NCBI RefSeq assembly: GCF_006345805.1
Contig: NC_042999.1
Location: 125,798,001-125,862,000 of the forward strand
DNA: 64,000 nt
Direction: 5' to 3'
Source of the DNA: Octopus sinensis
Taxonomy: Eukaryota
Positions within the stretch are counted from its first letter, which is position 1, and every line of letters starts with the position of its first letter. A model generated the notes under the pieces. The model was not told the origin of the DNA and ran no database searches. It worked only from the letters and a program-made list of their open reading frames with translations. A program made the translations under genes and the position numbers. Below are positions 2,561-64,000 of the stretch, in pieces.

Positions 2561-2744
2561 GCTTTTGGTTTTGGATGTAATGGCAAACCAGCTACAAAGA
2601 CCATGTGAAGAAAACAAGGATTTTCAGGATTATTCTCCTCAAATTTGTGAATCTAATCTTTTGTATTTGGCTAAAGATTTTAAAGAAATGTCCAATATTC
2701 TGCTGTCTTTAGGGGATTCTGATACTGTTGATGGTAAAGAAATG
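2561..2744 (+). CDS. ATXN10: Ataxin-10 internal coding exon (equivalent to human exon 7 by recalled structure)
   Basis: Acceptor tttctatctttAG at 2559-2560, donor GTaaat at 2745. 184 nt, phase 2 to phase 0. Encodes (R)LLVLDVMANQLQRPCEENKDFQDYSPQICESNLLYLAKDFKEMSNILLSLGDSDTVDGKEM, aligning by eye to human RVTLLDLM...AELIASTFVDQCKTVLKLASEEPPDDEE. In frame with the next exon. Confidence 0.85.
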
Positions 2745-7290: not shown

Positions 7291-8797
7291 CACAGCCCAA
7301 GTTAAAAAAGATTCCCAACAATTCAACTTTCTGGTTGACTTTAAGAACCCCCCACCTCCAATAGGGGCCTTAACTCACACATTTTAGAGCTCCATGTGCT
7401 CCATTTTTCAGGAGCAAAAACCTTTGAATAGGTTTTATAAGATTTGGATTTTGGAATCTGGGCATAAAGATGAGTAGTATGAGATAAATATGCCATGATT
7501 AGAATTTTTGCTAGGGTGTGTAAAGAAGGAAAGAACCCCCATTAAAACTCTTAATCTTCAATTTTGATGAAATTCAAATCATAGGTATTCCAGTTTATTA
7601 GAGAAAATACAAAAGAAAAGTTTAATTCTTCAATTCCATGTGACACAGGCAATGCCAGGTATCTCTGCTAGTATACAATAAATATCATTGAGGATAGCAA
7701 AAGGAGAAATCATCTATCTTAATCTTGTGTTGGAATTTCATCAGCAGCTGAGTATTCTCTTTAATTGTCTATTGTAACATTACATATAAGTCGTTTTTAA
7801 CTAAAAGCTTAAGTAAATCTGATAGATTGATTCACATGTATAATGTATTCTTGGTAACTAGTTCAATTAATAGATGGGTGGTTGTTAAGTGTTTTGTTCA
7901 TGTTGTATTACAAGGATACTGTGTATAAAAATAAGGTGTTTACATCTCTTTACATACAATGTTGTTAAATCTATAAATATATTCTGTGGTACAGTATAGC
8001 ATTAAACAAAACATTCTTAACACAGGGTTGAAAGATAAGGTGTATATATATGTCTATTCACAGTGGTAGCTAAAATTAATAGATATATTCTCGAGTACAG
8101 TAAAGTATTGACACAAAACACTTAACACCAGTACTTTATATTTTAGATATTTTGTACTCAGTTTAGTGCCTTATTAGTCTAAGATTCCATCTTGTTGGTG
8201 TTTCATTTATCAAAATTCAGTACCAATTAGCACAAAACAGTATCTCTTAGAAAAGCTTATATTTTTTTATATTCAAGTTAGTATATATAATTTCTTTTCT
8301 TAGAATGTCATTGCTGACTGTTAAGATTTCCTAAGATATAAAGTATAAGTTTATAACTTTATCAATACAACATCTTCAATAGAATTATAATATAACACTT
8401 AAGTGAGATAACTTTAAAATGAGGATAGCAATGAATACAGTGTTTTAGAATACATTATATACCAATTAAACTTGTCTTTTGTTTCTTTTAATGCTTTTAT
8501 CTTTAATTATTATTTCTACATAATGTCTTACATGTTTTTATATATTCAAAAGACAGATCGAGCATTTTCCCATCTTATTTTAGCTTGCTTGCTTGCTTAT
8601 ATTCTCATTTAAGCCCAATTACATTTTTTGATAAAGTTCCCTAAACTTTTTTTTCTATTGACTCCAAATATTTCCTATCATTTAAAATAAAATAAAGATG
8701 GTTTCAGAGTTTAATAAGTTTAAGTTAATTAATTAGTTTAATTAATATATGCTATTTAGGTAATTATTAAATAATATTTTAGATGAATTTGAAGAAA

Positions 8798-8968
8798 GAG
8801 GCATGGCTGTGTGGTAAGTAGCTTGCTTTTGAACCACATGGTTCCGGGTTCAGTCCCACTGCATGGCACCTTGAGCAAGTGTCTTCTGCTATGGTCTTGG
8901 ACCGACCAAAGCGTTGTGAGTGGATTTGGATGATGGAAACTGAAAGAAGCCTGTCATATATATGTATG

Positions 8969-9024
<56 letters not shown>

Positions 9025-9228
9025 TGTGTGTCTGTGTTTGTCCCCCCACCCCAACATCGCTTGACAAATGATGCTGGTGTGTTTACGTCCCCGTAACTTA
9101 GTGGTTCAGCAAAAGAGACCGATAGAATAAGTACTAGGCTTACAAAGAATAAATCCTGGGGTCGATTTGCTCGACTAAAGGCAGTGCTCCAGCATGGCCA
9201 CAGTTACATGACTGAAACAAGTAAAGAG
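8798..9228 (+). mobile_element. tRNA-derived SINE family A, full length with internal (TA)n
   Basis: A-box-like tgtggtaag, B-box-like ggttcagtcc, CORE-like ccttgagcaagtgtcttc, central TA microsatellite, 3' gactgaaacaagtaaagag. Confidence 0.9.
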
Positions 9229-10246: not shown

Positions 10247-10627
10247 TCTTTTACTTGTTTCAGTCATTTGACTGCAGCCATGCTGGAGCATTGCCTTTAG
10301 TCGAGCAAATCGACCCCAGAGCTTATTCTTTGTAAGTCTAGTACTTATTCTATCGGTCTCTTTTCCCAGACTGCTAAGTTATGGGGGCATAAACACACCA
10401 GCATTAGTTGTCAAGCGATGTTGGGGGGACAAACGCAGACACAAACATACACACACACACACACACACGCAATGGGTTTCTTCCAGTTTTCGTCTACCAA
10501 ATCCACTCACAAAGCTTTGGTTGGCTCGAGGCTATAGTAGAAGACACTTGGCCAAGGTGCCACGCAGTGGGACTGAACCCAGGACCATGTGGTTGGTAAG
10601 CAAGCCACTTACCACACGGCCACTCCT
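10247..10627 (-). mobile_element. tRNA-derived SINE family A, full length
   Basis: Reverse complement of the 8798-9228 copy, with an internal (CA)n. Confidence 0.9.
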
Positions 10628-11031
10628 GTTGGAAAGAGAGCAACTTAAAAGAAGAATTTTCGATACAGCTATAAACAATATAACAACCCATCTCCCCTCC
10701 TTCCCTAAAAGTCTAAAGTCTTATGCTTAGTGAAAACCAAAACAAGCAATACAAACAGCTCAAAGCATGGTTACTATCCTTCATAACAGTGCAGCTTTCT
10801 TATAGCAATGCAGCTGTTTTTCTTTTTTCACTGTTTGGCAGCAAATCGCAATCTGGCAACACTTAGCTATTTGGCAGCTTGAAGATATTCTTCAGCTTTC
10901 TGGCTTTGTGAAGGATCATTTTATAGAAATTGTAGATTTACTCTCCGGTTCCTTTCTGTCTTTCCCTTTAGGAAGAGGTGTCATTTGTTTTCTGCCACGA
11001 AGTCTATGCCTGTCACAATTGTTCCTTTCAG

Positions 11032-11143
11032 CAACCTTTTGTACTCCTAAAAGAACTGGAAGTTCTTTGCTGGGCTACATGCCAACATATTGGTTACCGT
11101 GCTTTAACGCAGGATGATACTGGACTACTTTCATGTGCCATTA
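11032..11143 (+). CDS. ATXN10: Ataxin-10 internal coding exon (human exon 8 equivalent)
   Basis: Acceptor ttcctttcAG (11030-11031), donor GTAAGT at 11144. 112 nt, phase 0 to 1. Encodes QPFVLLKELEVLCWATCQHIGYRALTQDDTGLLSCAI, matching human ALATIRLLDVLCEMT...QVFPGLLERVI. Not in the ORF track. Confidence 0.88.
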
Positions 11144-11418
11144 GTAAGTAATTTATTTTGTTTCTTTATATATGTTGTTTTGGACATTTGTGGAACCTAT
11201 TTGGTTTCTAAATACAGATGTTTAAATGGTGGACAATTAAACTTTGCTACATAGATTTATTTTTTAACTAACAGTTTAGTTGGTTAATTCAACCCTGAAA
11301 TATTACTGGTGTGCATTTTAATCACACCTGAGGGAAGAAAAACAGGATATGAAGTCTGATCAGTATGGTAAGAAATTGTCTTCTAAGCTCTAAACACTGC
11401 AGCTCTAAACGTTGGAGT

Positions 11419-11956: not shown

Positions 11957-12190
11957 GCAGGCGTGGCTGTGTGGTTAAGAAGTTTACTTCCCAACTACAT
12001 GGTTTCAGGTTCAGTCCCACTGCATGGCATCATGGGCAAGTGTCTTCTGCTATAGCTCTGGACTGACCAAAGCCTTGTGAATAGATTTAGTTGTTTGAAA
12101 TTGAAAGAAACTTGCCATTGTTTGTGTGTGCATGTATGTTTTAGTGTCTCCTTGTATGGACATTGTGTTGTAAATGAGTGTCACCTTCAT
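11957..12190 (+). mobile_element. tRNA-derived SINE family A, 5' part
   Basis: gcaggcgtggctgtgtggttaagaagtttacttcccaactacatggtttcaggttcagtcccactgc head. Confidence 0.8.
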
Positions 12191-19109: not shown

Positions 19110-19257
19110 ACATGCTTGCTTCCCAATCACATGGTTCCAGGTTCAGTCCCAGTGTGTGGCATCTTGGGCAAGTATCTTCTACTATAGTTTTGGGCCAACC
19201 AAATCTTTGTGTGTGAATTTGGTAGACAGAAACAGAAAGAAGCCCATTGTATGTATG

Positions 19258-19293
<36 letters not shown>

Positions 19294-19540
19294 ATATATG
19301 AGGAGAATTCACAAAAATACAAAAGACAAAGACAGGTGTTGTAGACATATATATTTGTGTGTGTTTGTCCCCCTGCTATTGCTTGACAACCGATGCTGGT
19401 GTATTTATGTCCATGTAACTTAGCGGTTCAGCAAAAGAGAGCAATAGACTAAGTACTAGGCTTAGAAAGAATGTCCTGGGGTCATGTTCTTCAACTAAAA
19501 CCCTTTATGGTGCTGCTGTCAAATGACTGAAACAAGTAAA
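19110..19540 (+). mobile_element. tRNA-derived SINE family A (5'-truncated) with internal (TA)n
   Basis: Matches the 8798-9228 copy from cttgcttcccaatcacatgg to gactgaaacaagtaaaaaa. Confidence 0.85.
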
Positions 19541-20369: not shown

Positions 20370-20512
20370 GTTTTCATCTACTAAACTCACTCACAGGGCT
20401 TTGGTCAGCATGAGACTATAGAAGACACATGCCCAAAGTATCATACAGTGCGACTTACCCAGGTACATATGGTTGAGAAGCAAGTTTTTTAACCATACAG
20501 CCATGCCTGTGC
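20370..20512 (-). mobile_element. tRNA-derived SINE family A, diverged 5' fragment
   Basis: Reverse complement of the family A head and CORE-like segment. Confidence 0.7.
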
Positions 20513-21444: not shown

Positions 21445-21745
21445 TGAATCCTGTACTTTTTTCTTCATTAAGTGTGGTACTTATTCTATTGGGTTATGTT
21501 GCCGAACTGCTAAGTTACAAGGATGTAAATAAACCAATGCTGATTGTGGTGGAGACACACACACGCACACATACACACAAAATGCTTTTGCGCAGTTTCT
21601 ATTGAGCAAATTCATTCATAAGGTATTGGCTGGCCGAGGGCTAGAGTAGAAGACACTTGCCCAAGGTGCTGCATTGTGGGACTGAACCTGAAGCCATACG
21701 ATTGCGAAACAAATTTATTAACCACAGAACCATGCTTGTGCCTGC
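21445..21745 (-). mobile_element. tRNA-derived SINE family A, diverged
   Basis: Reverse complement of the family A body and head. Confidence 0.75.
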
Positions 21746-22563: not shown

Positions 22564-23673
22564 GGTGGTGATGATAGTAGTGCTGTTGGCAAGGGTTTTT
22601 ATAATGTCGTCATTGTTTTCTTGAACCTTCTGACAAGCTTGTAGATAGAAACTGATGTATCCTTTGCATTTTTTTCCTTTTTGTGGAGGAAAATACAGTA
22701 GCTGTGTGTCTAATAAGATTTGGATATCAGTGTCTCATGAAAAACTACTGTATGATTCTCTGGCTTCCACTGTATTACTTTGTCTCTTGCAAACTTTGGT
22801 AATTAGATTTCTCAATCGGCAATTGACACTGTCTATTGAAGAAGTGCTCCTTCAGATCTTTAATGAAATATTTATTTAACATCAATGAAGATGTTAGCTG
22901 TCTAGTCAGACCAGATCTTTTGTTTCTTATTGGTCAAATTATAGATATTTTTATTTTATTTTATTTTATGGAATTCCTTCACCAAATAACTTCCTAGGAG
23001 GGTGTAATTCCAGTTTAAATGGAATTTCTATTTTCTGTCTTCTTTCTTTGAGTCAGCCACCACACCCCATAAAATAAAAAGACAATTTGAATACAGGGCC
23101 TGTTCAAACAGAGATGACATTTAATAGTTTTCTGCTATTCTACACTGTGATAGCCTTAGCCTAAGTGATATCAAAAGGTTTGCCATTAATTCTCATCAGC
23201 TCAGGCATTTTACTTCAATTTCTTGAATGAAATGAGAAATAGATTTTTTTTTCCTCATAGGCTAGAAAGAAGAAAAGAAACAAGATAAATAAAATTGTAA
23301 GGAAATAAACAAAAAAAAAGACAGATGGAGCTTTCAAGAGTTTTTACTTTTGGTTTGCCAACTTCATATGTGAATTAAATTAAAAATACCCAAAAGGAAG
23401 AAAGAAAAAGAAAATACCCACCCCATTTGGAAATCTGGTCATATTTTAATTGATTTTTTTCTGTAATTTAGTTTTATTGTGAAATAGCATAATATCCACT
23501 AATTTTTTTTCATCTGGTCTGTCTATCATACTTTCTTTAGTTAATTTGATATTCTGAAGAAAGAAAAAAATTATGGTTCCTATGATTGTAAGCACGAAGA
23601 AATTGAGTGTTTGTTAATACCTATTCTAAACTGATGCCAAGATGAAACATGTCTATGTTAGTATGTTCTAGAT

Positions 23674-25229: not shown

Positions 25230-26290
25230 CGAGAGTACCCATTGTTATTTAAATGTAAATTTAAGCACAAATCTCATTAGTACATTTGTGAAAATATGTG
25301 ATTTCACTTTGTAAATAGTCGAGTTATAGTATCCAACATTGCTTGACGTGATATCTGAACTCAGTGAATTTTGGGAGATTTTTTCCCACATTTTTTTGGC
25401 ATCGATTGTTTTTTCAACTTTGAAAATGGATAGGAGTTTCATGCTATCAATTTAAAGGTTTTTCAATGGAAAATATCGAGATATTGAGAAAAAGAATGAA
25501 TGAGGTACAAAGCACGTGGTGTACAAGAATGAATAGGATATTTCTGTATCCGAAACCGAAAGCAGCGATTCTGAAGAAACAAAGCGGCGATAACGACAGC
25601 AAAGATGACTTTACATCAGAATGAAGTAAAAACTTTAAAAATGTTATTAGCAATTTTTCTGAGGAGATGGGGTCTATCCATAATCTTTCTTAGGAAGTGA
25701 AACCATTAAACTTTAATTTTTTTCAGTATGCTTGTTTGAAGTGATCACTGTGGAAACAAACTGTTACGCAGAATGTAAGCAAACAGTATATGCCAGGAAA
25801 GCCCACGAAATGGGGGATCACAGTTTGGAAAATTTGTGAAGAAAATACTGGGTACTGCTGTGGATTTAGTTTTTATACAGGGAAAATAATGTTAGTCAAC
25901 ATGGCCTAGGGTATGATGTGGTCTGGAATTTATCACTTCCATACCATAAAACCAGGGCCGTATATTATTTTTTGACCGTTTTTTTTTTTTTTTTTTTTTA
26001 GTTCGGTCAAACTTGCTGTGGATTTAGGTGGATTCCAGTATTTCAGTTTATTTCACCTTTATGGTACACCTGTTCTGTTGTGCATTAAATTCAACTGATA
26101 ATCTAATGATGTGTACAATTCTATATCAAAATGTTGCATACCCAATTGAATATTAGCTAATGATTAATTTTCTATGGTGATGTTTAAACAAAATTTTAAT
26201 ATTTTTACCTTTTGCTCAGTTTACCTGGATTTACCTGTAATTAGAGTCACTTTGAGACAAAAGTTATGCAATAGAATTAACTGGGTTTAA
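25230..26290 (+). mobile_element. Possible internally deleted piggyBac-like relic
   Basis: CpG-retaining acidic coding-like patch SVSETESSDSEE (~25545-25580), a Cys-containing patch near 25750-25800 and a ...ctgggTTTAA end. TIR pairing not established. Confidence 0.3.
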
Positions 26291-27087: not shown

Positions 27088-27263
27088 AACTTCTGCAGAG
27101 TATAAGTGAAGTTGGTCAAGATGCCACTAGCATATTTGCTCCTGTTAACAAAGCAAAGGATATGGAGAGAGTGGACACCCAGCACCCGTCGTATGGTATC
27201 AAGAGAGATCTTATCCGTCTTATTGGAAACATGGTTTATAGAAATAAGGCCAACCAAGACAAG
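27088..27263 (+). CDS. ATXN10: Ataxin-10 internal coding exon, start of the conserved C-terminal domain (human exon 9 equivalent)
   Basis: Acceptor ccttattAG (27086-27087), donor GTAAGT at 27264. 176 nt, phase 1 to 0. Encodes (K)LLQSISEVGQDATSIFAPVNKAKDMERVDTQHPSYGIKRDLIRLIGNMVYRNKANQDK, matching the ATXN10 signature GFKSHLIRLIGNLCYKNKDNQDK. Confidence 0.95.
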
Positions 27264-28640: not shown

Positions 28641-29152
28641 ACATACCCTTTTGGAATCAGGATGACTCTGGGATTGAAAGTGTGCCCTTCCTTTGTTTCT
28701 TGAACATCCAGCATTGAAATCTGATTTAAAAGCATTTCGGTTGCTATTTCTAGCAGGTAAAGTTTGGCTGATTCATGCCATCTTGGTTGGCATTTGTCAG
28801 ATGATGTCAGAGATCAAGGGGGAGATAAATGACATTTGCTTAATTGATTTTACATCAAAGTAAGAACTTTGGGACAAATTGACCAACAGTTGGAATTCAA
28901 CTTGGGACTGGAACAATAGAATGACTGCATTGCAAAATTCTTATTAGTCCTTAACCTCTGACCAGACACCACTTGGGCATATAGTCATAATAGACATATT
29001 ATAGTCATGCTATTTAGCTCACTTTAGTTTTGGGCAGCAGGAGTTAGCATAAAAGTCTGTATGGAGTGCAGTTTTTACACTGGTTTTTACACTGTTTTTT
29101 ACACTGGTTTTTAATAAAAAAAGCTGTTCTAAAATGTAGCTTTTACTTCTAG

Positions 29153-29216
29153 GTCAGAGAACTGAATGGAATCCCATTGATTTTGAACCAAACCAATATT
29201 GATGGTAGAAATCCTT
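29153..29216 (+). CDS. ATXN10: Ataxin-10 64-nt coding exon (human exon 10 equivalent)
   Basis: Acceptor ttttacttctAG (29151-29152). Encodes VRELNGIPLILNQTNIDGRNP (human VNELDGIPLILDNCNISDSNP). Phase 0 to 1, followed by U12 donor GTATCCTTT. Confidence 0.95.
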
Positions 29217-29417
29217 GTATCCTTTCATTTATTATTTATTTTACTTGTTATTTATAGCTTCATTTACGTCTTAATATCTTCATTAAAATTAATAGTTTTG
29301 TTCGTTTATTTAGAAATTTTTGTTTCTATTTTGTCCTTTTTATTATTTTTTTTCCTGTTGACCATTTTGAATAATATTTTGTAATCTGTCTTTGTTCCTT
29401 AACATCTTCACTCACAG
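29217..29417 (+). other. ATXN10: U12-type (minor spliceosome) GT-AG intron, 201 nt
   Basis: Donor GTATCCTTTC at 29217-29226; branch site TTCCTTAAC at 29395-29403; short spacer to CAG ending at 29417. Splicing joins T+TT into a Phe codon and keeps the ATXN10 frame. Confidence 0.93.
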
Positions 29418-29533
29418 TTATCACACAATGGTCTATTCTTGCCATTCATAATTTGTGTGAGGATAATGAAACCAATAAAGTTGCCGTTGCTTCGATAAGG
29501 CCTGAAGCACAATCAGTCAACAAAGTAACTTAG
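29418..29533 (+). CDS. ATXN10: Ataxin-10 C-terminal coding exon (human exon 11 equivalent); 3' end uncertain
   Basis: Encodes (F)ITQWSILAIHNLCEDNETNKVAVASIRPEAQSVNKVT* (human FLTQWVIYAIRNLTEDNSQNQ). In-frame TAG at 29531-29533; a possible donor GTAACT at 29525 is an alternative end. Confidence 0.88.
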
Positions 29534-30491: not shown

Positions 30492-32505
30492 AGAAACCTA
30501 TCAGTAACTTAGCTATAATGCCTACCGTAAACAGCTGTAAGCCAAATTTACACTAAAAAAAAAAAAAATGTAATGACCATTATTTAAAACAGTTTGATTT
30601 GGATTCTGTGTTACTTGAAATTTCAAAGGCCAGTGAAAATCTAAACCAAATTGTTTTGAACAATACATGTAACTCCCAATAAATGCATTGAGTGCCCATT
30701 CTTTCATTTGTCCACTCTCTCGTATGTATATACATAAAACTGTATTTCTGAAGTAAGGTATAAAAGGAAATATTGGCTGTTGTTACTAAGAATGTGATAC
30801 AGAAATCAAAAACACAGTATTTAGAAATGTGACTATTCGTACTAATAACATAAATACTTTGGGAATAGAGGAATTTACTAGTTTTATAAGTAGACAAAAT
30901 AAATTTTACTGATCATTTAGAAGAATAAAGTGGAAATCATCTAATATAAATATCTTATAGTGGTATGTATCCTCTTAGAGCTTTCATTCTTGTTTAAGGA
31001 CCACAAAATCTCTTTTGTTGGAATCTAATATATACAATATAGAGGTTTTCTCTTGTTTTTTTTTTTTGTCATGTTACTGCCTTAATGAAACTCAGTTTAT
31101 TTCTTCAAATTTATTTTTGTTTTTAACCCCCTGCCACACACATGTATCAGAAGCAGTATTAGGCTAAAATGGCCATCAGTGTATCATACTTAATGTCCAT
31201 AAGAGATTTTATCCTAAGATGAATACTGTAATAAGTTTACCTTTTTTTGCATTGTGTTTGCAAGTGTGATACAAGATATGAAGATGTGTGTAGTTTTTTT
31301 TTTCCAAATTGAAAAAGGGGATAAAATTTAAATTTAAAGAAAATATGAATTTAAGCTGGTTACTACTTTTTGAAAATGCTTTATTTCTTGGTTTTAGTGT
31401 TTTCAAATCTTGAAAAATTGTACTAACTTCAAAATATATGTGTCTGTCTCATCCACTTCTAAATTACAAAAATTAAAATTTTATCAGTAGTTATGTATGT
31501 GTGCCTGTGTGCATACATATGATCTATGTATATGTGTGTGTGTGTATATATATCTATGTATAAACACTTGAATGCTTGTGAGTACATGTATACTCACACA
31601 CATTTATATTTATATGTGTGTTTAATATATATATATATACATACACATATACAGGCAGGCAAGCACCTCCTGCATGATGAAGTGTTGTATTCATAAGAAT
31701 CTTAATGTAATGAGTCAATGCAAAATCTATTTTCCTGTTAACTGTCATGTTTTACACAAATTAATGTGTAAAATAGGTTTCCTATTAGAGGAGGTATCAA
31801 ACTTTTCATGAATACAACTCTTCTATAACCAGTGTGTTTGTGTGTGTGTGTGTATGTGTGTTTTTGTACATGTATGAACATGTGTATTTTGTATTGGCCC
31901 AGTATGATTACTGCTGAATATCTGAAAACAATAAAAACAATATATGAGAGAGGAGGGAGAAAGAAGTGTGACTTAAAACAAAAGGCTTTAATCATTTTTA
32001 TCCAGTTTCCACAAATAGTGACACTGCAATACATATTAGAGTATTTTTTGTTTTTAAATATTCTTGAGCACCTATTTATAGCTCAGTAATACAGTTCATT
32101 ATTTTTTATTGTTCACTTTTTATAAGCTTGCTTTTGTAATTATATACAAATATTGTTGCACTTTTATACAAATAGCATTGAATTTAAGATCTGAGAAATT
32201 GTTTATATTTGAGGACACATATATTTCAGCAAAGTTTGTGCAATGCTCTCCTCTCTTCACTTTTTTAAAAATCCTATTGCTACCCAATGGGCTCCAAAAT
32301 ATGGATTGCTTATCTTTTTATATTTTATTCATGCTGTTTATCTTTATGAAAAACAATAACAAAATGGTAGTTGCATTTATAATGTGAGATGATAATTTGA
32401 CCAAAAAAGTATTCCATCCAAAATATTATGTAATCCATGTTTTCATTGTTTGTATTAGTTTTGTGTGTGTCTATTTACATACATATATACATACATGTAT
32501 GCATG

Positions 32506-38700: not shown

Positions 38701-41580
38701 ATATCAAGTTTTCTATTACTTTAAGTTAAGGATATTCCATTATTTAGATATTACTACTGCTATTCATTGACTATCAATATTTAGCAATCAAAGATTGAGT
38801 GTTGATGTTACAGTATCTTACATAGCAAGGAATATATAAAGGAAATTTGAGATTTTCTTTACGCTCAATAAAAGTCATCATAACATTGAACAAGAAAATT
38901 GTCTAGATGACTTCTTTTTTCTTTGCAATAAGCTTTGCTTTGTGATATTGTAAATGTGTTTCTATGTTGAACACATTTTTATGCAAGTCTATAAGTATAG
39001 TCACTGCTCCCCATTTATAGCTGTTTTGAGGTTGTAATTTTTCACACTAATAACCTTTTCTGTAGAGATGAATGCTTTTTAGAAATAGATACATCTGTTT
39101 TGATTTAGTTTGATTTTAATCATCATAAGGCAATTAGATACATGAATAAGGCATCCAATGATGATCAGAGATGAAACCAATCAAAACATGGTGTGGATGT
39201 AGATTATTAAAAAACGAAATGTTTCATCTTTAAGTATAAGGTCAATAGTTTGAAAAATAATAACTTTATTAACAATCCCTCTTTTCATATAGTCAATGTC
39301 TATTAAGGTTTATATTCTCGACTAATGATGTTTATTTTAGCAAGGCCTCAGTAAGAGTTGAAATAGATTTTAATTACTGAATGCCTCTTAAAATAATAAT
39401 AAAAATACCCTTTTATGTTTTGCTTTTGAGATGAGGTACAATGGAGAAATTACTGCTAATAATAATAGTAATAGCATGATGAATATAAAGTGATGCTTTC
39501 CTTTATTTTTTTTCTTCAGTTTTCAGTATTATTATTTGTAATATTTGAACAATTTTTTTAATAATTTTAGACAATTATCCAAAATATGGATTGTTTTCTG
39601 CATCTATTGCTGAATCTTGCCTTAACTACATGGAATTCATGTATAAATATTTTTTTCTTGCTTTTGTTTAAAATTTAAATAAAAGTGTAAACTTTGCAAA
39701 CCATTCCTTCCTTGGTAAATGAATATCTTGTGAAATAACTTGCTGATATTCCAAGTTTTGAACAAATTTTACAGATTATTTGCCAGAGACCAGTTACATT
39801 CTTTATATTAGAGGACCAATATCCCAAAATGCTGCATGCATACACACAGTAATGTTTCCGGCCTTATATATTTAATATATGGCAAGAAAAGCTGATTGCT
39901 GGCATACTTGCTAGAGATCTAGGCAAAATATCTTGAGAATATAGTTTGCTCTTTACATTCTGAGTTTAAATCTGCTGGAGCAGCAAGATTGGTAAATAAT
40001 GTACCAGTAACATACTAGGATTTGATTTAATCGTTTATACCTCTCCCCTAAAAAGTTTGTGGTTTTCTGCCAGTGTAAGTATTACTTAGAGGAGAGGTGG
40101 AAGATTTTAACAAACATTCTCTGGTTTGTCCTGACTGATTTTTGTTTTCCTTTTATCTTCTCAGCTCTGGTTATTCTTTGAAGAAATATTACATTAATAA
40201 TAAATGTGATATTTATGATTATTACTACTGTGTATGTTGATTTTTTTATCTTGTTATTTATTGATTAAAATTATTATTCTACCATGGCACCCTTCCAACA
40301 AATATATAACAATAAACAGCACTTTGTTTTTTAATTTTTATTTTGATATACTCATGTTATTGAATAAAGAAAATTGCATACTTATTTGCAGTTAAAGTTG
40401 AATTATTTTTTATTATTTACATCCAGTTTGTTGATGTTATTGAAAATAGCTAACATTATGACCATAATTCAATTGACTAGGTGCCTAAAAACTAGGCTTG
40501 TCCATCGTTAAAGGATGTTATTATTTTTTTTAGGGGAAGGACAGTTTGAACGCCGGGGAAAATGCCTCGCCACGTTTCTTCTGGCTTTTTATGTTCTGAG
40601 GTCAGCTTTGCCTTTCATCCCTCTGGTGTTGATAAAATAAAGCACCAGTCAAGTACTGATATTAAAATCAACTGTTCCATTCCCCATTTGATCTTGTACA
40701 AAATCTGCTGTTAGGACAAATACTGCCGTTAATTAGGTTTCTTAAAAAATGTATTTGCTTTAAGTATGATGCAAAGATTATTTCAAACTAATGCTGCTTC
40801 TGTCGTACATAACGAATTATTACATTTCTATTTCTTATTTATTGCAATAAATGCATTAAAAGAAACCTAGGCTATGAGATATTCACAATAACGGCATCTC
40901 AAATCTCTGACAGACCATTAATTGGGAAGTTTACTGTATTATTAAAAAGAAAAAAAAAAGTAAATGTAACTATTGACAGACGGAACCGAAAAAAGCAAGA
41001 AAATATCCAGTTAACTATAACGGATTTTGGGTGACCGTCAAAGGTTTTGTGCATCACTTAGGGTATTGAATATAATTCAGCCTGGAAAGACTTTCTTTTC
41101 TTGGAGCTATTGAAATGCAATTAGAAGAAACACATCTGATAGTTTACCTTCATTGTTATGCTCGCATAACGATGTTGTATGCCGCCATGGGAGTTTGTTG
41201 ATCAGCGGTATTCATCAATGAATAATTAATGTGCCATTTTCAAGAAATGGAGAAGAAATACACAGAAACTGGTGTTAATGCATTTTCAGCGAACCTTAAC
41301 TATGTTAGGTGAAGTTTAAATTATAGGTATTGAAATTGTGAGTTTAACAGTTATCATAATCACAACCATTATTAAATAGGAAGGGTGGTTGGTAGCTTAA
41401 CAGAATCGTTAGAGCGTCGGACCAAATATCTTATGGTAGTTCTTCCAGCTCTTTACGTTCTGAATTCAAATTCTTTCGAGGTCGATAAAATAAAGTACCT
41501 GTCAAATACATGGTTCGATGATATATATATATATATATACATACATACATACATGTGTGTGTGTGTGGTGTGTATATATA

Positions 41581-41779
41581 TATCGTTTGAATTTACACAA
41601 AAAAAAAAAATACGAAGACGGGTGTGTAAGCAACAAACACATGTATTAGTTTAACGTTCGGAAAGGTAAGAAAGTCTTTTACGTTTCGAGCCTAAGCTCT
41701 TTAACAGAAAGGGACACGAGAAAATAAACAGAGAGAGAATAAAAAAAGGTTTAGTGGCTAGCGATCAATCATGGACATT

Positions 41780-41780
<1 letters not shown>
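41581..41780 (-). mobile_element. Penelope-like non-autonomous end with degenerate hammerhead (41676-41711); duplicated at 43124-43322
   Basis: Minus strand CTTT-CTGTTAA-A-GAGC-TTAG-GCTC-GAAACGT-A-AAAG: stems I, II and palindromic III intact, core box mutated. Confidence 0.6.
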
Positions 41781-41819
<39 letters not shown>

Positions 41820-41821
<2 letters not shown>

Positions 41822-43044
41822 GGGTGTGTAAGGTATTTGAGGACATACCTTTTTTGGGGTCATTGCTGCATTTTTTGCTAACTCTGTATAATCTTTGTTT
41901 CAGAAAATAATAATGACAGACCCTCAGCTTATTCAAGAAATGAAGATGCATGCTGTTATTGTTGTTATAAAGGTTGAGCATAGTGATTTAGAAATATCTC
42001 GAGTTTTAAAAGTTGCCAGATCTTTCGTCTACAAAGTTTGTAAGGAGTTAGAAACTGCAGATGCAAATGTATCACCAGTATCAAAGCACAAAAAGCATTC
42101 TAAATGCTCTGAAATCATCCGAACACCTGAATTTATCCAGCAAGCTCAACAGATTACAATCCCAAAAAGTCTATGAGGTTAATTGTTAAAGATCTCCATG
42201 TATCAGAAGGGACAGTCAGAAATGTCGAAGACATCAGATATAAGTCTTATATGATGAGGAAAGGTCAATTTGCCCGAAAAAGCAGAAAAAATCACTACAT
42301 CAGATCTAAAAGGCTCTTAAACTGAAAAATCCAGCAGAAGAAGATTTGATTTGGCTTTTCTCAAACGAGAAAAACTTCGACCAAGAGCAAAATTTAACAG
42401 AAGATTTAACAGATGGTTATGTGCAGACCCTTCTGAAGTTTCAAGTGTTATGCGTGCAAAATTTTCTGCAACTGTCATAGTTTTAGGGGTTGTCAGCAAT
42501 GAAGGACGTGATGCCTCCTTACTTCTTTCCACAAGGCCTTAGAGTTAACTTTGCCGCCTACATTGAAGTCCTGGAAATAATTGTTAAGCCCTGGATAGAC
42601 AGTGTATGCAATGGAAGGCCATATATGCTTCAGTAAGACTCTGCACTATCACACATGGCTCTAGTAACGCAAATGAATGGCTGAAAACTTTTATCATCAC
42701 ATAACCCCTAACATTTGGCCTCCTAATTCCCCAGGTCTCAATCCATTGGACTATTACATGTGGAGCGTTGTCGAGAGAGAGGTCAATGAACACGCCCGTA
42801 ACACCAAAGATTCTTTGAAAGCTGCCATAGTCAGAGTAATGTCCAAAATGAACCAGGATCACTTGATTCAAGCATGTAGATGATTTAGATCTCATATAGT
42901 AGTTGTTGAAGCTGAAGGTGGCTTTATTGAATAGTATAGAAAAGAAGGTTTATTTTTATCCTCATAGCATTTTTTGCTACGTAAAGTTATCTGTTATTAT
43001 ATATCTGTTTTTTTCTTCTTATAAATAAATCTGTCATCAAATAT

Positions 43045-43048
<4 letters not shown>
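41820..43048 (+). mobile_element. Decayed Tc1/mariner maT (DD37D-like) transposon, copy 1
   Basis: Left TIR cagggtgtgtaaggtatttgaggaca, right partial TIR tgtcatcaaatatctta, TA flanks. Broken transposase: HTH fragment MTDPQLIQEMKMHAV..., VLGVVSNEG, DSA.SH, WPPNSPGLNPLDYY.W. Confidence 0.9.
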
Positions 43049-43110
<62 letters not shown>

Positions 43111-43318
43111 GTGTGTATATATATATCGTTTGAATTTACACAAAAAAAAAAATACGAAGACGGGTGTGTAAGCAACAAACACATGTATTAGTTTAACGTT
43201 CGGAAAGGTAAGAAAGTCTTTTACGTTTCGAGCCTAAGCTCTTTAACAGAAAGGGACACGAGAAAATAAACAGAGAGAGAATAAAAAAAGGTTTAGTGGC
43301 TAGCGATCAATCATGGAC

Positions 43319-43358
<40 letters not shown>

Positions 43359-43360
<2 letters not shown>

Positions 43361-44583
43361 GGGTGTGTAAGGTATTTGAGGACATACCTTTTTTGGGGTC
43401 ATTGCTGCATTTTTTGCTAACTCTGTATAATCTTTGTTTCAGAAAATAATAATGACAGACCCTCAGCTTATTCAAGAAATGAAGATGCATGCTGTTATTG
43501 TTGTTATAAAGGTTGAGCATAGTGATTTAGAAATATCTCGAGTTTTAAAAGTTGCCAGATCTTTCGTCTACAAAGTTTGTAAGGAGTTAGAAACTGCAGA
43601 TGCAAATGTATCACCAGTATCAAAGCACAAAAAGCATTCTAAATGCTCTGAAATCATCCGAACACCTGAATTTATCCAGCAAGCTCAACAGATTACAATC
43701 CCAAAAAGTCTATGAGGTTAATTGTTAAAGATCTCCATGTATCAGAAGGGACAGTCAGAAATGTCGAAGACATCAGATATAAGTCTTATATGATGAGGAA
43801 AGGTCAATTTGCCCGAAAAAGCAGAAAAAATCACTACATCAGATCTAAAAGGCTCTTAAACTGAAAAATCCAGCAGAAGAAGATTTGATTTGGCTTTTCT
43901 CAAACGAGAAAAACTTCGACCAAGAGCAAAATTTAACAGAAGATTTAACAGATGGTTATGTGCAGACCCTTCTGAAGTTTCAAGTGTTATGCGTGCAAAA
44001 TTTTCTGCAACTGTCATAGTTTTAGGGGTTGTCAGCAATGAAGGACGTGATGCCTCCTTACTTCTTTCCACAAGGCCTTAGAGTTAACTTTGCCGCCTAC
44101 ATTGAAGTCCTGGAAATAATTGTTAAGCCCTGGATAGACAGTGTATGCAATGGAAGGCCATATATGCTTCAGTAAGACTCTGCACTATCACACATGGCTC
44201 TAGTAACGCAAATGAATGGCTGAAAACTTTTATCATCACATAACCCCTAACATTTGGCCTCCTAATTCCCCAGGTCTCAATCCATTGGACTATTACATGT
44301 GGAGCGTTGTCGAGAGAGAGGTCAATGAACACGCCCGTAACACCAAAGATTCTTTGAAAGCTGCCATAGTCAGAGTAATGTCCAAAATGAACCAGGATCA
44401 CTTGATTCAAGCATGTAGATGATTTAGATCTCATATAGTAGTTGTTGAAGCTGAAGGTGGCTTTATTGAATAGTATAGAAAAGAAGGTTTATTTTTATCC
44501 TCATAGCATTTTTTGCTACGTAAAGTTATCTGTTATTATATATCTGTTTTTTTCTTCTTATAAATAAATCTGTCATCAAATAT

Positions 44584-44587
<4 letters not shown>
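43359..44587 (+). mobile_element. Decayed Tc1/mariner maT transposon, copy 2 (tandem duplicate)
   Basis: Same sequence and same ORF fragments as copy 1, at offset 1539. Confidence 0.9.
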
Positions 44588-44655
<68 letters not shown>

Positions 44656-44680: not shown

Positions 44681-45080
44681 GGCGCAGGCGTGGCTGCGTA
44701 GTAAGAAGCTTGCTTCCCAACCACATGGTTCCAGGTTCAATTCCACTGTGTGTCCCCTTGGGCAAGCGTCTTCTACTATAGCCTCGGGCCGACCAGAGCC
44801 TTGTGAGTGGATTTGGCTGATGGAAACTGAAAGAAGCCCGTCGTATATTCATATGTGTATATATCTCTGTGTGTGTCTTCGTGTCCGTGTTTGTCCCTCA
44901 CCACCACTTAACAACAGGTGTTGGTGTGTTTAGTCCCCATGACATAGCAGTTCGGCAAAGAACATCGATAGAATAAGTACTAGGCGTAAAAAAATAAGTC
45001 CTGGGGTCGATTTGTTTGACTAAAACCCTTCAAGGCGGTGCCCCGGCAGGGCCGCAGTCAAATGACTGAAACAAGTAAAT
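44681..45080 (+). mobile_element. tRNA-derived SINE family A, full length, CpG-rich
   Basis: ggcgcaggcgtggctgcgtagtaagaagcttgcttcccaaccacatggttccaggttcaattcc head through to gactgaaacaagtaa. Confidence 0.9.
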
Positions 45081-50709: not shown

Positions 50710-51110
50710 TTATTCTTTTACTTGTTTCAGTCCAGTCATTTGACTGCGGTCATGCTGGAGCACCGCCTTTAGTCGAACAAATCGACCCCAGGACTTATTC
50801 TTTGTGAGCCTAGTACTTATTCTATCGGTCTTTGTTACCAAACTGCTATGTTACGAGGACATAAACACACTAACATCGGTTGTCAAACGATGGTGGTGGG
50901 ACAAACATAGACACACAAATACGTACATACATACATGCATATATATATATAAATGTATATAGGAGGGTCTTCTTTCAGTTTCCGTCTACCAAATCCACTC
51001 ACAAGGCTTTGGTCTGCTCAAGGTTATAGAAGACACTTTCCCAAGGTGCCACGCAGTGGGACTGAACCCGGAACCGTGTGACTGGGAAGTAATCTTACCT
51101 CACAGCGGGA
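50710..51110 (-). mobile_element. tRNA-derived SINE family A
   Basis: Reverse complement of the family A body and head. Confidence 0.85.
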
Positions 51111-62619: not shown

Positions 62620-63588
62620 TTAATTACTTTTCTCTCCTTTGCATTGCGGGTGGCGACACCGGGGTTTGTGGAAGATGCTGTGTGGGCCATTCTCTGCGGC
62701 AATGCCATTACGGTCATTAACGTGGGGCGCGGCTGAGCACCCCACTAGTCCTGCGATGTGTGAACCATCACATCCCCTCCATCTTCCGCTGCTTTGCTCT
62801 CTTTTTTCTTCATAATTTTTTAAAGTGTGTATTAGTAAATGAATTGCCAATTCCCGATTGTAAAACTTTGTAGGTGTTCGTAAGCAACTCACGAGTTGGA
62901 GTATCACGTTCTCATGGAAGTCTAGGTACAATTGTCTATGAACTGGGAAAATGGTTCTTATTAGCAGCCAATCGTTTGCATGCTCTGCGTAGTCGAAGCC
63001 CATTTCTTCTCTAATTTTCGCTTTGTCTTTTTACACACCTCTCGGATCATTCAAAATCTCCATCAATTACTTGTTAGTTATCAAAAGGCCGGTGAAATTC
63101 ATACATACTGCCTTAATCGCTTTCTCTTTGAGTTCACATGTTTTTTGAATGGTGGTAGTGATTGTTTTTCACTTAGTTTTTGGTGTCCCCGATAGTTTGC
63201 AACTTTGTCCATTTTCTATCTCATTACCCGTGCTTGAATAAATTTCTCTGGTAAGGAGACTCAATCTTTTGTAACATACTGCCTGTAATGCAAACAAGAC
63301 AGTTGCTGTTTGTAAAAACAGCTTCACCGTCGCTGACGAGCGAGTATGATCTAGCAGCTTGCACCATGCTTTGATGTATTCGAAGACTTGCTTTCGGGTC
63401 ACAAACGGAGATGAGTCTATCTCATTATCACCGGAGGGAAAGTCCCCTGACTGAGCGTAGAGACTACTGATTTGAGGAATCGTGTCGAACCTATCAGCTG
63501 CCTCCCGTTGATGCAATGACGCAATTTGGCGGAGCTGGGAGTTGTTGGTAGGTATCTTCGTCATAGTAGAGATCGATGCAAGTGGCAC
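62620..63588 (-). pseudogene. Decayed ~320-codon reading frame, possibly a MULE (ZSWIM3/9-like) transposase N-terminus
   Basis: ORFs 63169-63588 and 62620-63003 share one frame, with only 3 stops across 323 codons. Motifs FVTRKQVFEYIKAWC...RSSATVK...CYKRLSL...YSSTG...SCKLSG recall the WRKY/FAR1-like DNA-binding domain of animal MULEs. Family assignment is weak. Confidence 0.4.
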
Positions 63589-64000
63589 TTTAGTGTTAAC
63601 TGAATGGGGATTACTCTAAAGGAATTTCTTTCTCTTTGAAGTGCACCTGAACACTATACACAATAATTTCATTATTATTATTATTATTTCATCATATTTG
63701 ATGGCGTATATGATGGCGTATTTAGTGTAATTTACTTTCTTGTTCATAGCTCTGTCTGCTCCTCCAGAAGAGCCATACTAAAATAATGTACAATGTAATA
63801 AAAACAAATATTCTTACGAAAAAATGTATAAAGGCAGACTCCAGGTATTGGGATCAGGACCGGATTGAAACCATGGTCGCCCGGGGCACTTCAAGTTCGG
63901 TGGGCCCCTTATTCGCAAGAATTAAAGTCTTAGAAAATTACTAAATTTAAATCTCAAAACCCATCTATTCTAACTAATTGAATTTGATGAATTAGCAGAG

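What the first reader, a model, noticed from the sequence alone, without database searches (positions are those of the whole stretch)
29217..29417. U12-type minor-spliceosome intron in ATXN10, apparently conserved with human
Seen: donor GTATCCTTTC, branch TTCCTTAAC ending 14 nt before the last intron base, no long polypyrimidine tract, phase 1, only 201 nt while neighbouring introns are 1.9-16 kb and full of repeats. Known: these are the U12 consensus signals, and I recall human ATXN10 as a minor-intron gene at this junction (intron 10). Inference: the intron predates the protostome-deuterostome split, stays compact and TE-free, and may be a rate-limiting regulatory step. Standard annotation may miss it.
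Basis: partly seen in the sequence, partly recalled or inferred. Interest (0 to 1): 0.72.

Follow-up and report, generated by a model that had tools for sequence, protein, structure and literature searches.

The report
Conserved U12-type intron in ATXN10
The 201-base stretch is a genuine minor-spliceosome (U12-type) intron in the ataxin-10 gene of a mollusc-like animal, at exactly the same codon as the known U12 intron 10 of mammalian ATXN10; it is correct but expected, because such ancient minor introns are already catalogued.

Summary
The donor GTATCCTTTC starts at 29217. The branch site TTCCTTAAC lies at 29395-29403, 14 nt before the terminal AG at 29416-17. The intron is 201 nt and in phase 1.

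The flanking exons splice to ...GRNP|FITQW..., which matches the Pfam ataxin-10 domain (1.8e-29). A spliced transcript from a related species uses the same junction.

The same 64-nt exon, followed by a phase-1 intron with GTATCCT and a [TC]TCTTRAC branch site 9-11 nt from the AG, occurs in three other genomes:
- the pearl oyster Pinctada imbricata (1278 nt)
- an unnamed metagenomic eukaryote (359 nt)
- the shrew Suncus etruscus, where exon counting shows it is intron 10 (2839 nt)

Human isoform X1 reads ...SNP-CIL..., as expected from reading through T|GTATCCTT. Papers name I10 as the human U12 intron. The core interpretation, including an origin before the protostome-deuterostome split, is therefore supported.

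Three side claims are not supported:
- Compactness is not conserved (201 to 2839 nt).
- Being repeat-free is trivial for 201 nt.
- The comparator annotations did not miss the intron.

A rate-limiting or regulatory role is untested here. This is an ordinary orthologue of a known minor intron and of low novelty.

The parts
2561..2744 (+). ATXN10 exon homologous to mammalian exon 7 (approximate)
   Evidence: Weak but multi-query tblastn hits, e.g. P0142 169-224, E=0.02, with 6-7 representative proteins hitting. Acceptor is TTTAG|G. Donor AAATG|GTAAAT was chosen because it gives phase 0, matching the next exon.
11032..11143 (+). ATXN10 exon homologous to mammalian exon 8
   Evidence: 13 representative ATXN10 proteins hit 11029-11145 (best E=0.016). 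Acceptor is TTTCAG|CAA. Donor is ATTA|GTAAGT, phase 1, matching the phase-1 acceptor of the next exon.
27088..27263 (+). ATXN10 exon homologous to mammalian exon 9 (...GIKRDLIRLIGNMVYRNKANQDK), U2-type donor AAG|GTAAGT
   Evidence: tblastn with my from-memory human ATXN10 sequence gave E=1e-8. P0121 gave 2e-30. Sequence.
29153..29216 (+). 64-nt exon homologous to mammalian exon 10 (VRELNGIPLILNQTNIDGRNP + 1 base)
   Evidence: The exon is also 64 nt in Pinctada, L009 and Suncus.
29217..29417 (+). U12-type GT-AG intron, 201 nt, phase 1
29217..29225 (+). U12-type 5' splice site GTATCCTTT
   Evidence: GTATCCT is invariant in the alignment of four species.
29395..29403 (+). Branch-point sequence TTCCTTAAC (complement of the U12 snRNA branch-recognition region)
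   Evidence: A conserved [TC]TCTTRAC block lies 9-14 nt from the AG in four species.
29416..29417 (+). 3' splice site AG
   Evidence: The junction NP|F is fixed by homology and by the spliced transcript L002.
29418..29533 (+). Exon homologous to mammalian exon 11 (FITQWSILAIHNLCEDNETNK...), open to TAG at 29531-33; probably the last coding exon
   Evidence: No downstream exon was found with bivalve or human tails. The related transcript L002 also stops a few codons after the domain.

Best explanation
Window 29217-29417 is a GT-AG U12-type (minor-spliceosome) intron of the ataxin-10 gene. It is orthologous to intron 10 of mammalian ATXN10.

Mechanism, inferred from the established model of minor splicing and not assayed here:
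- The U11/U12 di-snRNP recognises the intron as a unit.
- U11 pairs with the rigid 5' splice site GTATCCTTT, and U6atac takes over this pairing later.
- U12 pairs with TTCCTTAAC and bulges the branch adenosine about 15 nt upstream of the AG.
- No polypyrimidine tract or U2AF-type recognition is needed.
- Splicing joins T (29216) to TT (29418-19) to make the Phe codon of the conserved ...NPFITQW... motif inside the Atx10homo_assoc domain.

If the intron is retained, the frame runs into a stop after 13 codons (NPCILSFIIYFTCYL*), so retention would truncate the domain or trigger decay.

The intron, its phase and the 64-nt exon before it were already present in the common ancestor of molluscs and mammals. 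The intron has been lost in some other lineages.
For: Signals and coordinates:
- All signals are at the stated positions.
- The spliced product matches Atx10homo_assoc across the junction, at 9e-19 for exons 10+11 and 1.8e-29 for exons 9-11.
- The other three introns of the gene in the window have ordinary U2-type donors (GTAAGT, GTAAGT, GTAAAT) and pyrimidine-rich acceptors.

Transcript evidence:
- A spliced transcript contig of a relative (L002/P0121, 81% amino-acid identity) joins ...AATCCAT|TCATTGCT..., that is NP|F.

Orthologous genomic introns after a 64-nt exon, all phase 1:
- Pinctada imbricata: CCTT|GTATCCTTTT ... TTCTTAAC, then 11 nt to the AG; 1278 nt.
- Metagenomic contig L009: CCAT|GTATCCTTCA ... 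TTCCTTGAC, then 9 nt to the AG; 359 nt.
- Suncus etruscus: CCCT|GTATCCTGGC ... TTCCTTGAC, then 10 nt to the AG; 2839 nt. It lies after the tenth coding exon and a 33.7-kb intron 9.
- Alignments show conservation confined to the exon, GTATCCT and the branch-site block.

Read-through isoforms:
- Nine database proteins, including human isoform X1, read ...NP-CIL..., the translation of T|GT ATC CTT.

Literature:
- Human ATXN10 I10 is U12-type and is retained on SMN loss or HDAC11 knock-down (PMC3964310; PMC4506483; PMC5435706).
- Molluscs are comparatively rich in minor introns (PMC10639083).
Against: - There is no RNA from this organism, so use of 29216/29418 rests on homology and on a relative's transcript.
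- The minor snRNA genes cannot be checked from a 64-kb window. Rfam found only RNase MRP.
- The organism is not identified. It is called mollusc-like only because the closest named protein is from a bivalve (63% identity, against 45-46% for mammals).
- An in-frame U2-like GT lies 12 nt upstream (GATG|GTAGAA, 29205) and could be used as a minor alternative.
- The U12 and U2 signals were compared by consensus, not scored with intronIC or MaxEnt.
Confidence: 0.94

Rival explanations
1. An ordinary U2-type GT-AG intron that resembles the U12 consensus by chance.
For: Each 8-mer alone is at chance frequency in the window. Loosely defined motif pairs within 1 kb are expected about 0.5 times per window.
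Against: - Both strict motifs sit exactly on the homology-defined exon ends, at the right branch-to-AG distance.
- The donor (T|GTATCC) is a poor U1 match, and no pyrimidine tract precedes the AG.
- The same signals recur at the same codon in an oyster, an unnamed eukaryote and a shrew, while the rest of the intron is unalignable.
Confidence: 0.02
2. The intron position is ancient, but U12-type identity arose independently in molluscs and vertebrates through conversion from a U2-type intron.
For: None specific. It cannot be formally excluded with four genomes.
Against: - Four lineages share GTATCCT and [TC]TCTTRAC at the same spacing.
- From established knowledge, conversion runs overwhelmingly from U12 to U2, and gain of both rigid motifs is very rare.
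- Pan-eukaryotic surveys treat such shared minor introns as ancestral (PMC10639083, PMC11347168).
Confidence: 0.02
3. Beyond being a U12 intron, its shortness in this genome is selected, and its slow removal acts as a rate-limiting or retention switch for ataxin-10 output.
For: - Mammalian ATXN10 I10 is retained when snRNP supply drops.
- Minor introns have been proposed as switches limited by U6atac (PMC3728624, listed).
- Nine annotated isoforms read into this intron.
- Retention here gives a stop after 13 codons.
- The intron is the only short one among four in the window.
Against: - Length is not conserved: 201, 359, 1278 and 2839 nt.
- A repeat-free 201 nt is expected by chance.
- No expression data exist for this organism.
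- The largest survey finds minor and major intron lengths correlated across species and favours largely neutral evolution (PMC10639083).
Confidence: 0.2

Closest known systems
Human and mouse ATXN10 intron 10 (U12-type, GT-AG)
   Same: - Same gene family.
- Same 64-nt upstream exon.
- Same codon (NP|F) and phase 1.
- GTATCCT donor, and a TTCCTTRAC branch site 10-14 nt before the AG.
- Shown for Suncus etruscus by sequence, and for human by the read-through isoform plus literature.
   Different: - 201 nt here against 2839 nt in the shrew.
- Branch site is TTAAC here and TTGAC in the shrew.
- The flanking gene is smaller, and the C-terminal tail of the protein appears shorter here.
Pinctada imbricata ATXN10 (VSWD01000005.1), orthologous intron
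   Same: Donor context CCTT|GTATCCTTT is identical. The branch site ends in TTAAC. The protein junction is GRNP|FITQW.
   Different: The intron is 1278 nt. The branch site is TTCTTAAC, one mismatch to TCCTTAAC, and lies 11 nt rather than 14 nt before the AG.
U12-type introns in general (Minor Intron Database, Intron Annotation and Orthology Database and intronIC catalogues)
   Same: All the sequence hallmarks are present: a rigid 5' splice site, a branch site complementary to U12, a short branch-to-AG distance, no pyrimidine tract, a non-zero phase, and a single minor intron among major introns.
   Different: Nothing atypical was found. It is simply at the short end of the length range for its gene.

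Membership tests
U12-type (minor-spliceosome) intron, GT-AG subtype | 5' splice site /RTATCCTT directly at the exon boundary | tested here: met
   GTATCCTTTC at 29217, at the boundary fixed by protein homology.
U12-type (minor-spliceosome) intron, GT-AG subtype | Branch-point sequence TCCTTRAY, complementary to U12 snRNA | tested here: met
   TTCCTTAAC at 29395-29403, a perfect match to the consensus.
U12-type (minor-spliceosome) intron, GT-AG subtype | Short, constrained distance from branch site to 3' splice site (roughly 8-20 nt) | tested here: met
   14 nt lie after the motif, putting the branch A about 15 nt from the last intron base. The orthologues have 9-11 nt.
U12-type (minor-spliceosome) intron, GT-AG subtype | No strong polypyrimidine tract at the 3' end | tested here: met
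   The sequence between the branch site and the AG is ATCTTCACTCAC. This contrasts with the pyrimidine-rich acceptors of exons 9 and 10. The judgement is qualitative.
U12-type (minor-spliceosome) intron, GT-AG subtype | The junction is actually used in mRNA | tested here: inconclusive
   The junction is used in a spliced transcript of a relative (L002), and it is required for the conserved NPFITQW motif. No RNA from this organism is available.
U12-type (minor-spliceosome) intron, GT-AG subtype | Removal depends on U11, U12, U4atac and U6atac, and these genes are present in the genome | not testable with these tools
   Only a 64-kb window is available. Rfam found no minor snRNA in it. Molluscs are reported to have minor introns (PMC10639083).
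Orthologue of mammalian ATXN10 intron 10 | The host gene is an ATXN10 orthologue | tested here: met
   Atx10homo_assoc at 1.8e-29. Homologues are named ataxin-10. Five collinear exons match mammalian exons 7-11.
Orthologue of mammalian ATXN10 intron 10 | Same position in the protein alignment and the same phase | tested here: met
   In Suncus the tenth coding exon (64 nt) ends ...NNP plus 1 base, and intron 10 follows. Human isoform X1 diverges after DSNP with CIL.
Orthologue of mammalian ATXN10 intron 10 | The mammalian intron at that position is itself U12-type | tested here: met
   Suncus has GTATCCTGG ... TTCCTTGAC, then 10 nt to the AG. Human I10 is called U12-type in PMC3964310 and PMC4506483.
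Orthologue of mammalian ATXN10 intron 10 | Present in further lineages on both sides of the bilaterian split | tested here: met
   It is present in Pinctada imbricata, a bivalve, and in the unnamed eukaryote L009. It is absent, with the exons fused, in L004, L005, L006 and L008, which is consistent with secondary loss.

The most novel reading that the evidence does not exclude
In this repeat-rich genome the ATXN10 minor intron may be held at about 200 nt by selection, for example for intron-definition recognition by the U11/U12 di-snRNP. It may then act as a regulated retention switch, with a premature stop 13 codons into the intron controlling ataxin-10 dosage. This would make it a tractable invertebrate model for minor-intron control of a neurological disease gene.
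Probability: 0.08. Interest if true: 0.45.

Novelty: new member of a known kind. Interest (0 to 1): 0.18.

Why it matters
It is a clean example of an ancient minor intron. Its position, its phase and even the 64-nt upstream exon have stayed fixed from molluscs to mammals. This supports the accepted view that most animal U12 introns are ancestral and are only ever lost.

It is useful for annotating this genome, because it marks ATXN10 as a minor-intron gene. It adds nothing conceptually new. Human ATXN10 I10 is an established U12 intron, and conservation of minor introns between protostomes and vertebrates has been surveyed genome-wide (PMC10639083, PMC11347168).

Tried and rejected
1. Two homologue searches gave little. 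The 57-aa spliced peptide found nothing.
2. Human and Rousettus genomic DNA could not be fetched because the gene ranges were 171 kb and 125 kb. The 78-kb shrew gene solved this.
3. I looked for a further downstream coding exon using bivalve, human and relative tails and found nothing convincing. I therefore treat exon 11 as probably terminal.
4. A 9-aa match, KNPIATQWA at 32267-32293, looked like a possible processed copy spanning the junction. Nucleotide comparison shows it is chance.
5. The second GTATCCTT at 22657(+) and the TCCTTAAC at 28948(+) lie deep in introns and are at chance frequency.
6. No supplementary tables were held for the intron-taxonomy paper. No paper mentions the run accession of the related transcript, so neither the relative nor the window organism could be named.
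7. Motif-count statistics alone do not prove the case. The argument rests on position and conservation.

Full report
**Observation.**
- Exon sequence ...GATGGTAGAAATCCTT is followed at 29217 by GTATCCTTTC.
- TTCCTTAAC lies at 29395-29403.
- Fourteen bases later (ATCTTCACTCACAG) the intron ends in AG at 29416-17.
- The exon resumes with TTATCACACAATGG.
- The intron is 201 nt, 22% GC and 55% T.
- The codon is split T|TT, which is phase 1.

**Gene and exon model.** The two flanking exons, spliced, give VRELNGIPLILNQTNIDGRNP|FITQWSILAIHNLCEDNETNK.... This matches Pfam Atx10homo_assoc across the junction (9e-19). With the preceding exon added, the match is 1.8e-29 over profile positions 1-75.

tblastn with ataxin-10 proteins places five collinear exons on the + strand:
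- about 2561-2744 (exon 7-like, weak hits)
- 11032-11143 (exon 8-like, weak hits)
- 27088-27263 (exon 9-like)
- 29153-29216 (exon 10-like)
- 29418-29533 (exon 11-like, open to TAG)

The three long introns have ordinary U2-type donors (GTAAAT, GTAAGT, GTAAGT) and pyrimidine-rich acceptors. Only the 201-nt intron carries U12 signals.

**Is it more than chance?** Motif counts alone do not show it. GTATCCTT and TCCTTAAC each occur three times in the window on both strands, against about 2.2 expected. Loosely defined donor/branch pairs within 1 kb are expected about 0.5 times per shuffled window. What is decisive is that both strict motifs sit exactly on exon ends defined independently by protein homology, at the correct branch-to-AG spacing, and that they are conserved in other genomes.

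**Transcript evidence.** The closest database protein is P0121 (81% identity). It comes from a 1255-nt assembled transcript, L002 (Logan SRR8281689). In that transcript exons 9, 10 and 11 are joined without introns, and the junction reads AATCCAT|TCATTGCT, that is NP|F. A relative therefore demonstrably uses this junction. No RNA from the window's own organism is available.

**Orthologous introns.**
- *Pinctada imbricata* (L001). A 64-nt exon ends ...AATCCTT, followed by GTATCCTTTT. The intron is 1278 nt. Its 3' end is ...TGTTCTTAACATTATGTCTAG|TTATAACACAGTGG. The branch site is one mismatch from the consensus and lies 11 nt before the AG.
- *Metagenomic eukaryotic contig L009* (JAAUXT010101906.1). 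A 64-nt exon is followed by CCAT|GTATCCTTCA. The 3' end is ...TTCCTTGACTTGTCGCAG|TCATCCAGCAATGG. The intron is 359 nt.
- *Suncus etruscus* (L010). tblastn of its ataxin-10 finds ten coding exons up to ...DDNNP. The tenth is 64 nt and is preceded by a 33.7-kb intron 9. It is followed by CCCT|GTATCCTGGC. The 3' end is ...TTCCTTGACACAGCCGCAG|TCGTGGCCCAGTGG. Intron 10 is 2839 nt.

Alignments of the four 5' and 3' regions show invariant GTATCCT and a conserved [TC]TCTTRAC block. The rest of the intron is unalignable.

Four other metagenomic eukaryote contigs (L004, L005, L006, L008) encode ...NP[LMF]I.QW... without interruption. The intron has therefore been lost in some lineages.

**Link to human.** Human genomic DNA could not be fetched because the gene range is 171 kb.
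- Human 'isoform X1' (P0025) is identical to the canonical protein up to ...DSNP and then reads CILACE.... This is exactly the translation of T|GT ATC CTT.
- Eight further database proteins, from muntjac, jerboa, vole, polar bear, pig and three unnamed representatives, do the same.
- The literature states that human ATXN10 contains a U12-type intron, I10, following exon 10. It is retained on SMN deficiency or HDAC11 knock-down (PMC3964310; PMC4506483; PMC5435706).
- The shrew exon count ties 'intron 10' to the NP|F position.

**Mechanism.** The following is inferred from the established model of minor splicing. U11 pairs with GTATCCTTT, and U6atac pairs there later. U12 pairs with TTCCTTAAC and bulges the branch A about 15 nt from the AG. 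Recognition is by the U11/U12 di-snRNP and needs no pyrimidine tract. Splicing restores the Phe codon of NPFITQW inside the ataxin-10 domain. Retention would hit a stop after 13 codons (NPCILSFIIYFTCYL*).

**Side claims.**
- Compactness is not a conserved property: the lengths are 201, 359, 1278 and 2839 nt.
- Within-window repeats cover 15-25% of the neighbouring introns and 0% of the U12 intron. A random 201-nt piece would usually be repeat-free, so this carries no weight.
- The Pinctada and Suncus annotations both splice the intron correctly, so GT-AG minor introns are not systematically missed. Read-through isoforms are, however, often annotated.
- A rate-limiting or regulatory role is plausible by analogy with mammals but is untested here.

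**Comparison with what is known.** This is a standard GT-AG U12-type intron and an orthologue of a well-known one. Pan-eukaryotic surveys already report that molluscs are relatively rich in minor introns. They tabulate minor-intron conservation between Octopus sinensis and human (PMC10639083). They also infer the ancestral state of human minor introns from protostome orthologues, including Mollusca (PMC11347168). I found no paper that names the molluscan ATXN10 intron specifically, so I file it as a new member of a known kind.

**Limits.**
- The organism is not identified. The nearest named protein is from a bivalve (63% identity), against 45-46% for mammals.
- Minor snRNA genes cannot be checked from this window. 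Rfam found only RNase MRP.
- U12 and U2 signals were compared by consensus, not scored with intronIC.

**Verdict.** The core interpretation (a U12 intron in ATXN10, conserved with human I10 and older than the protostome-deuterostome split) is supported with high confidence. The added claims about compaction, annotation and regulation are unsupported or untested. Novelty and interest are low.

Noticed in passing
window 63372-63626 (+): A full-length RNase MRP RNA gene (Rfam RF00030, 83.2 bits against a gathering score of 50, model positions 1-266). It lies about 34 kb downstream of the ATXN10 exons.
   Followed up: partly
window 25745-25906 (+), also 25424-25621: A piggyBac-type transposase remnant (Pfam DDE_Tnp_1_7, 29.3 bits) lies inside the 15.9-kb ATXN10 intron. 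It is broken into short open frames.
   Followed up: partly
window 41558-43100 and 43101-44639: A tandem duplication of a 1.54-kb unit at 99.7% identity, which suggests a very recent event.
   Followed up: partly
window, e.g. 1723-1859, 8781-9110, 10374-10630(-), 11959-12137, 19114-19299, 20370-20508(-), 21593-21735(-), 44686-44864, 50846-51106(-): An interspersed family of SINE-like repeats with about 10 copies at 70-88% identity. Several copies lie inside ATXN10 introns 7 and 8. It accounts for much of the repeat content of the long introns.
   Followed up: partly
window 29418-29533; L002 378-478: The ataxin-10 reading frame here stops at TAG 29531-33, after profile position about 75 of 99 of the Atx10homo_assoc domain. 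The related transcript L002 also stops early. The tail of about 25-30 residues seen in bivalve and mammal (…GLADASLLKKVGFEVEKKG…) was not found downstream. This may be a lineage-specific C-terminal truncation or an undetected last exon.
   Followed up: partly
window 29205-29210 (+): An in-frame U2-like donor, GATG|GTAGAA, lies 12 nt upstream of the U12 donor. It is a possible cryptic or alternative site that would delete GRNP.
   Followed up: no
L004 790-984, L005 2750-2944, L006 2676-2849, L008 3001-3126: In four unnamed metagenomic eukaryote contigs, exons 10 and 11 of ATXN10 are fused. The U12 intron has been lost there, while neighbouring short introns remain.
   Followed up: partly
L010 40095-73752 (Suncus etruscus): Intron 9 is the longest intron of the shrew gene at 33.7 kb. 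It is the intron that carries the SCA10 ATTCT expansion in human. In the window, the longest intron is instead the one before exon 9 (15.9 kb).
   Followed up: no
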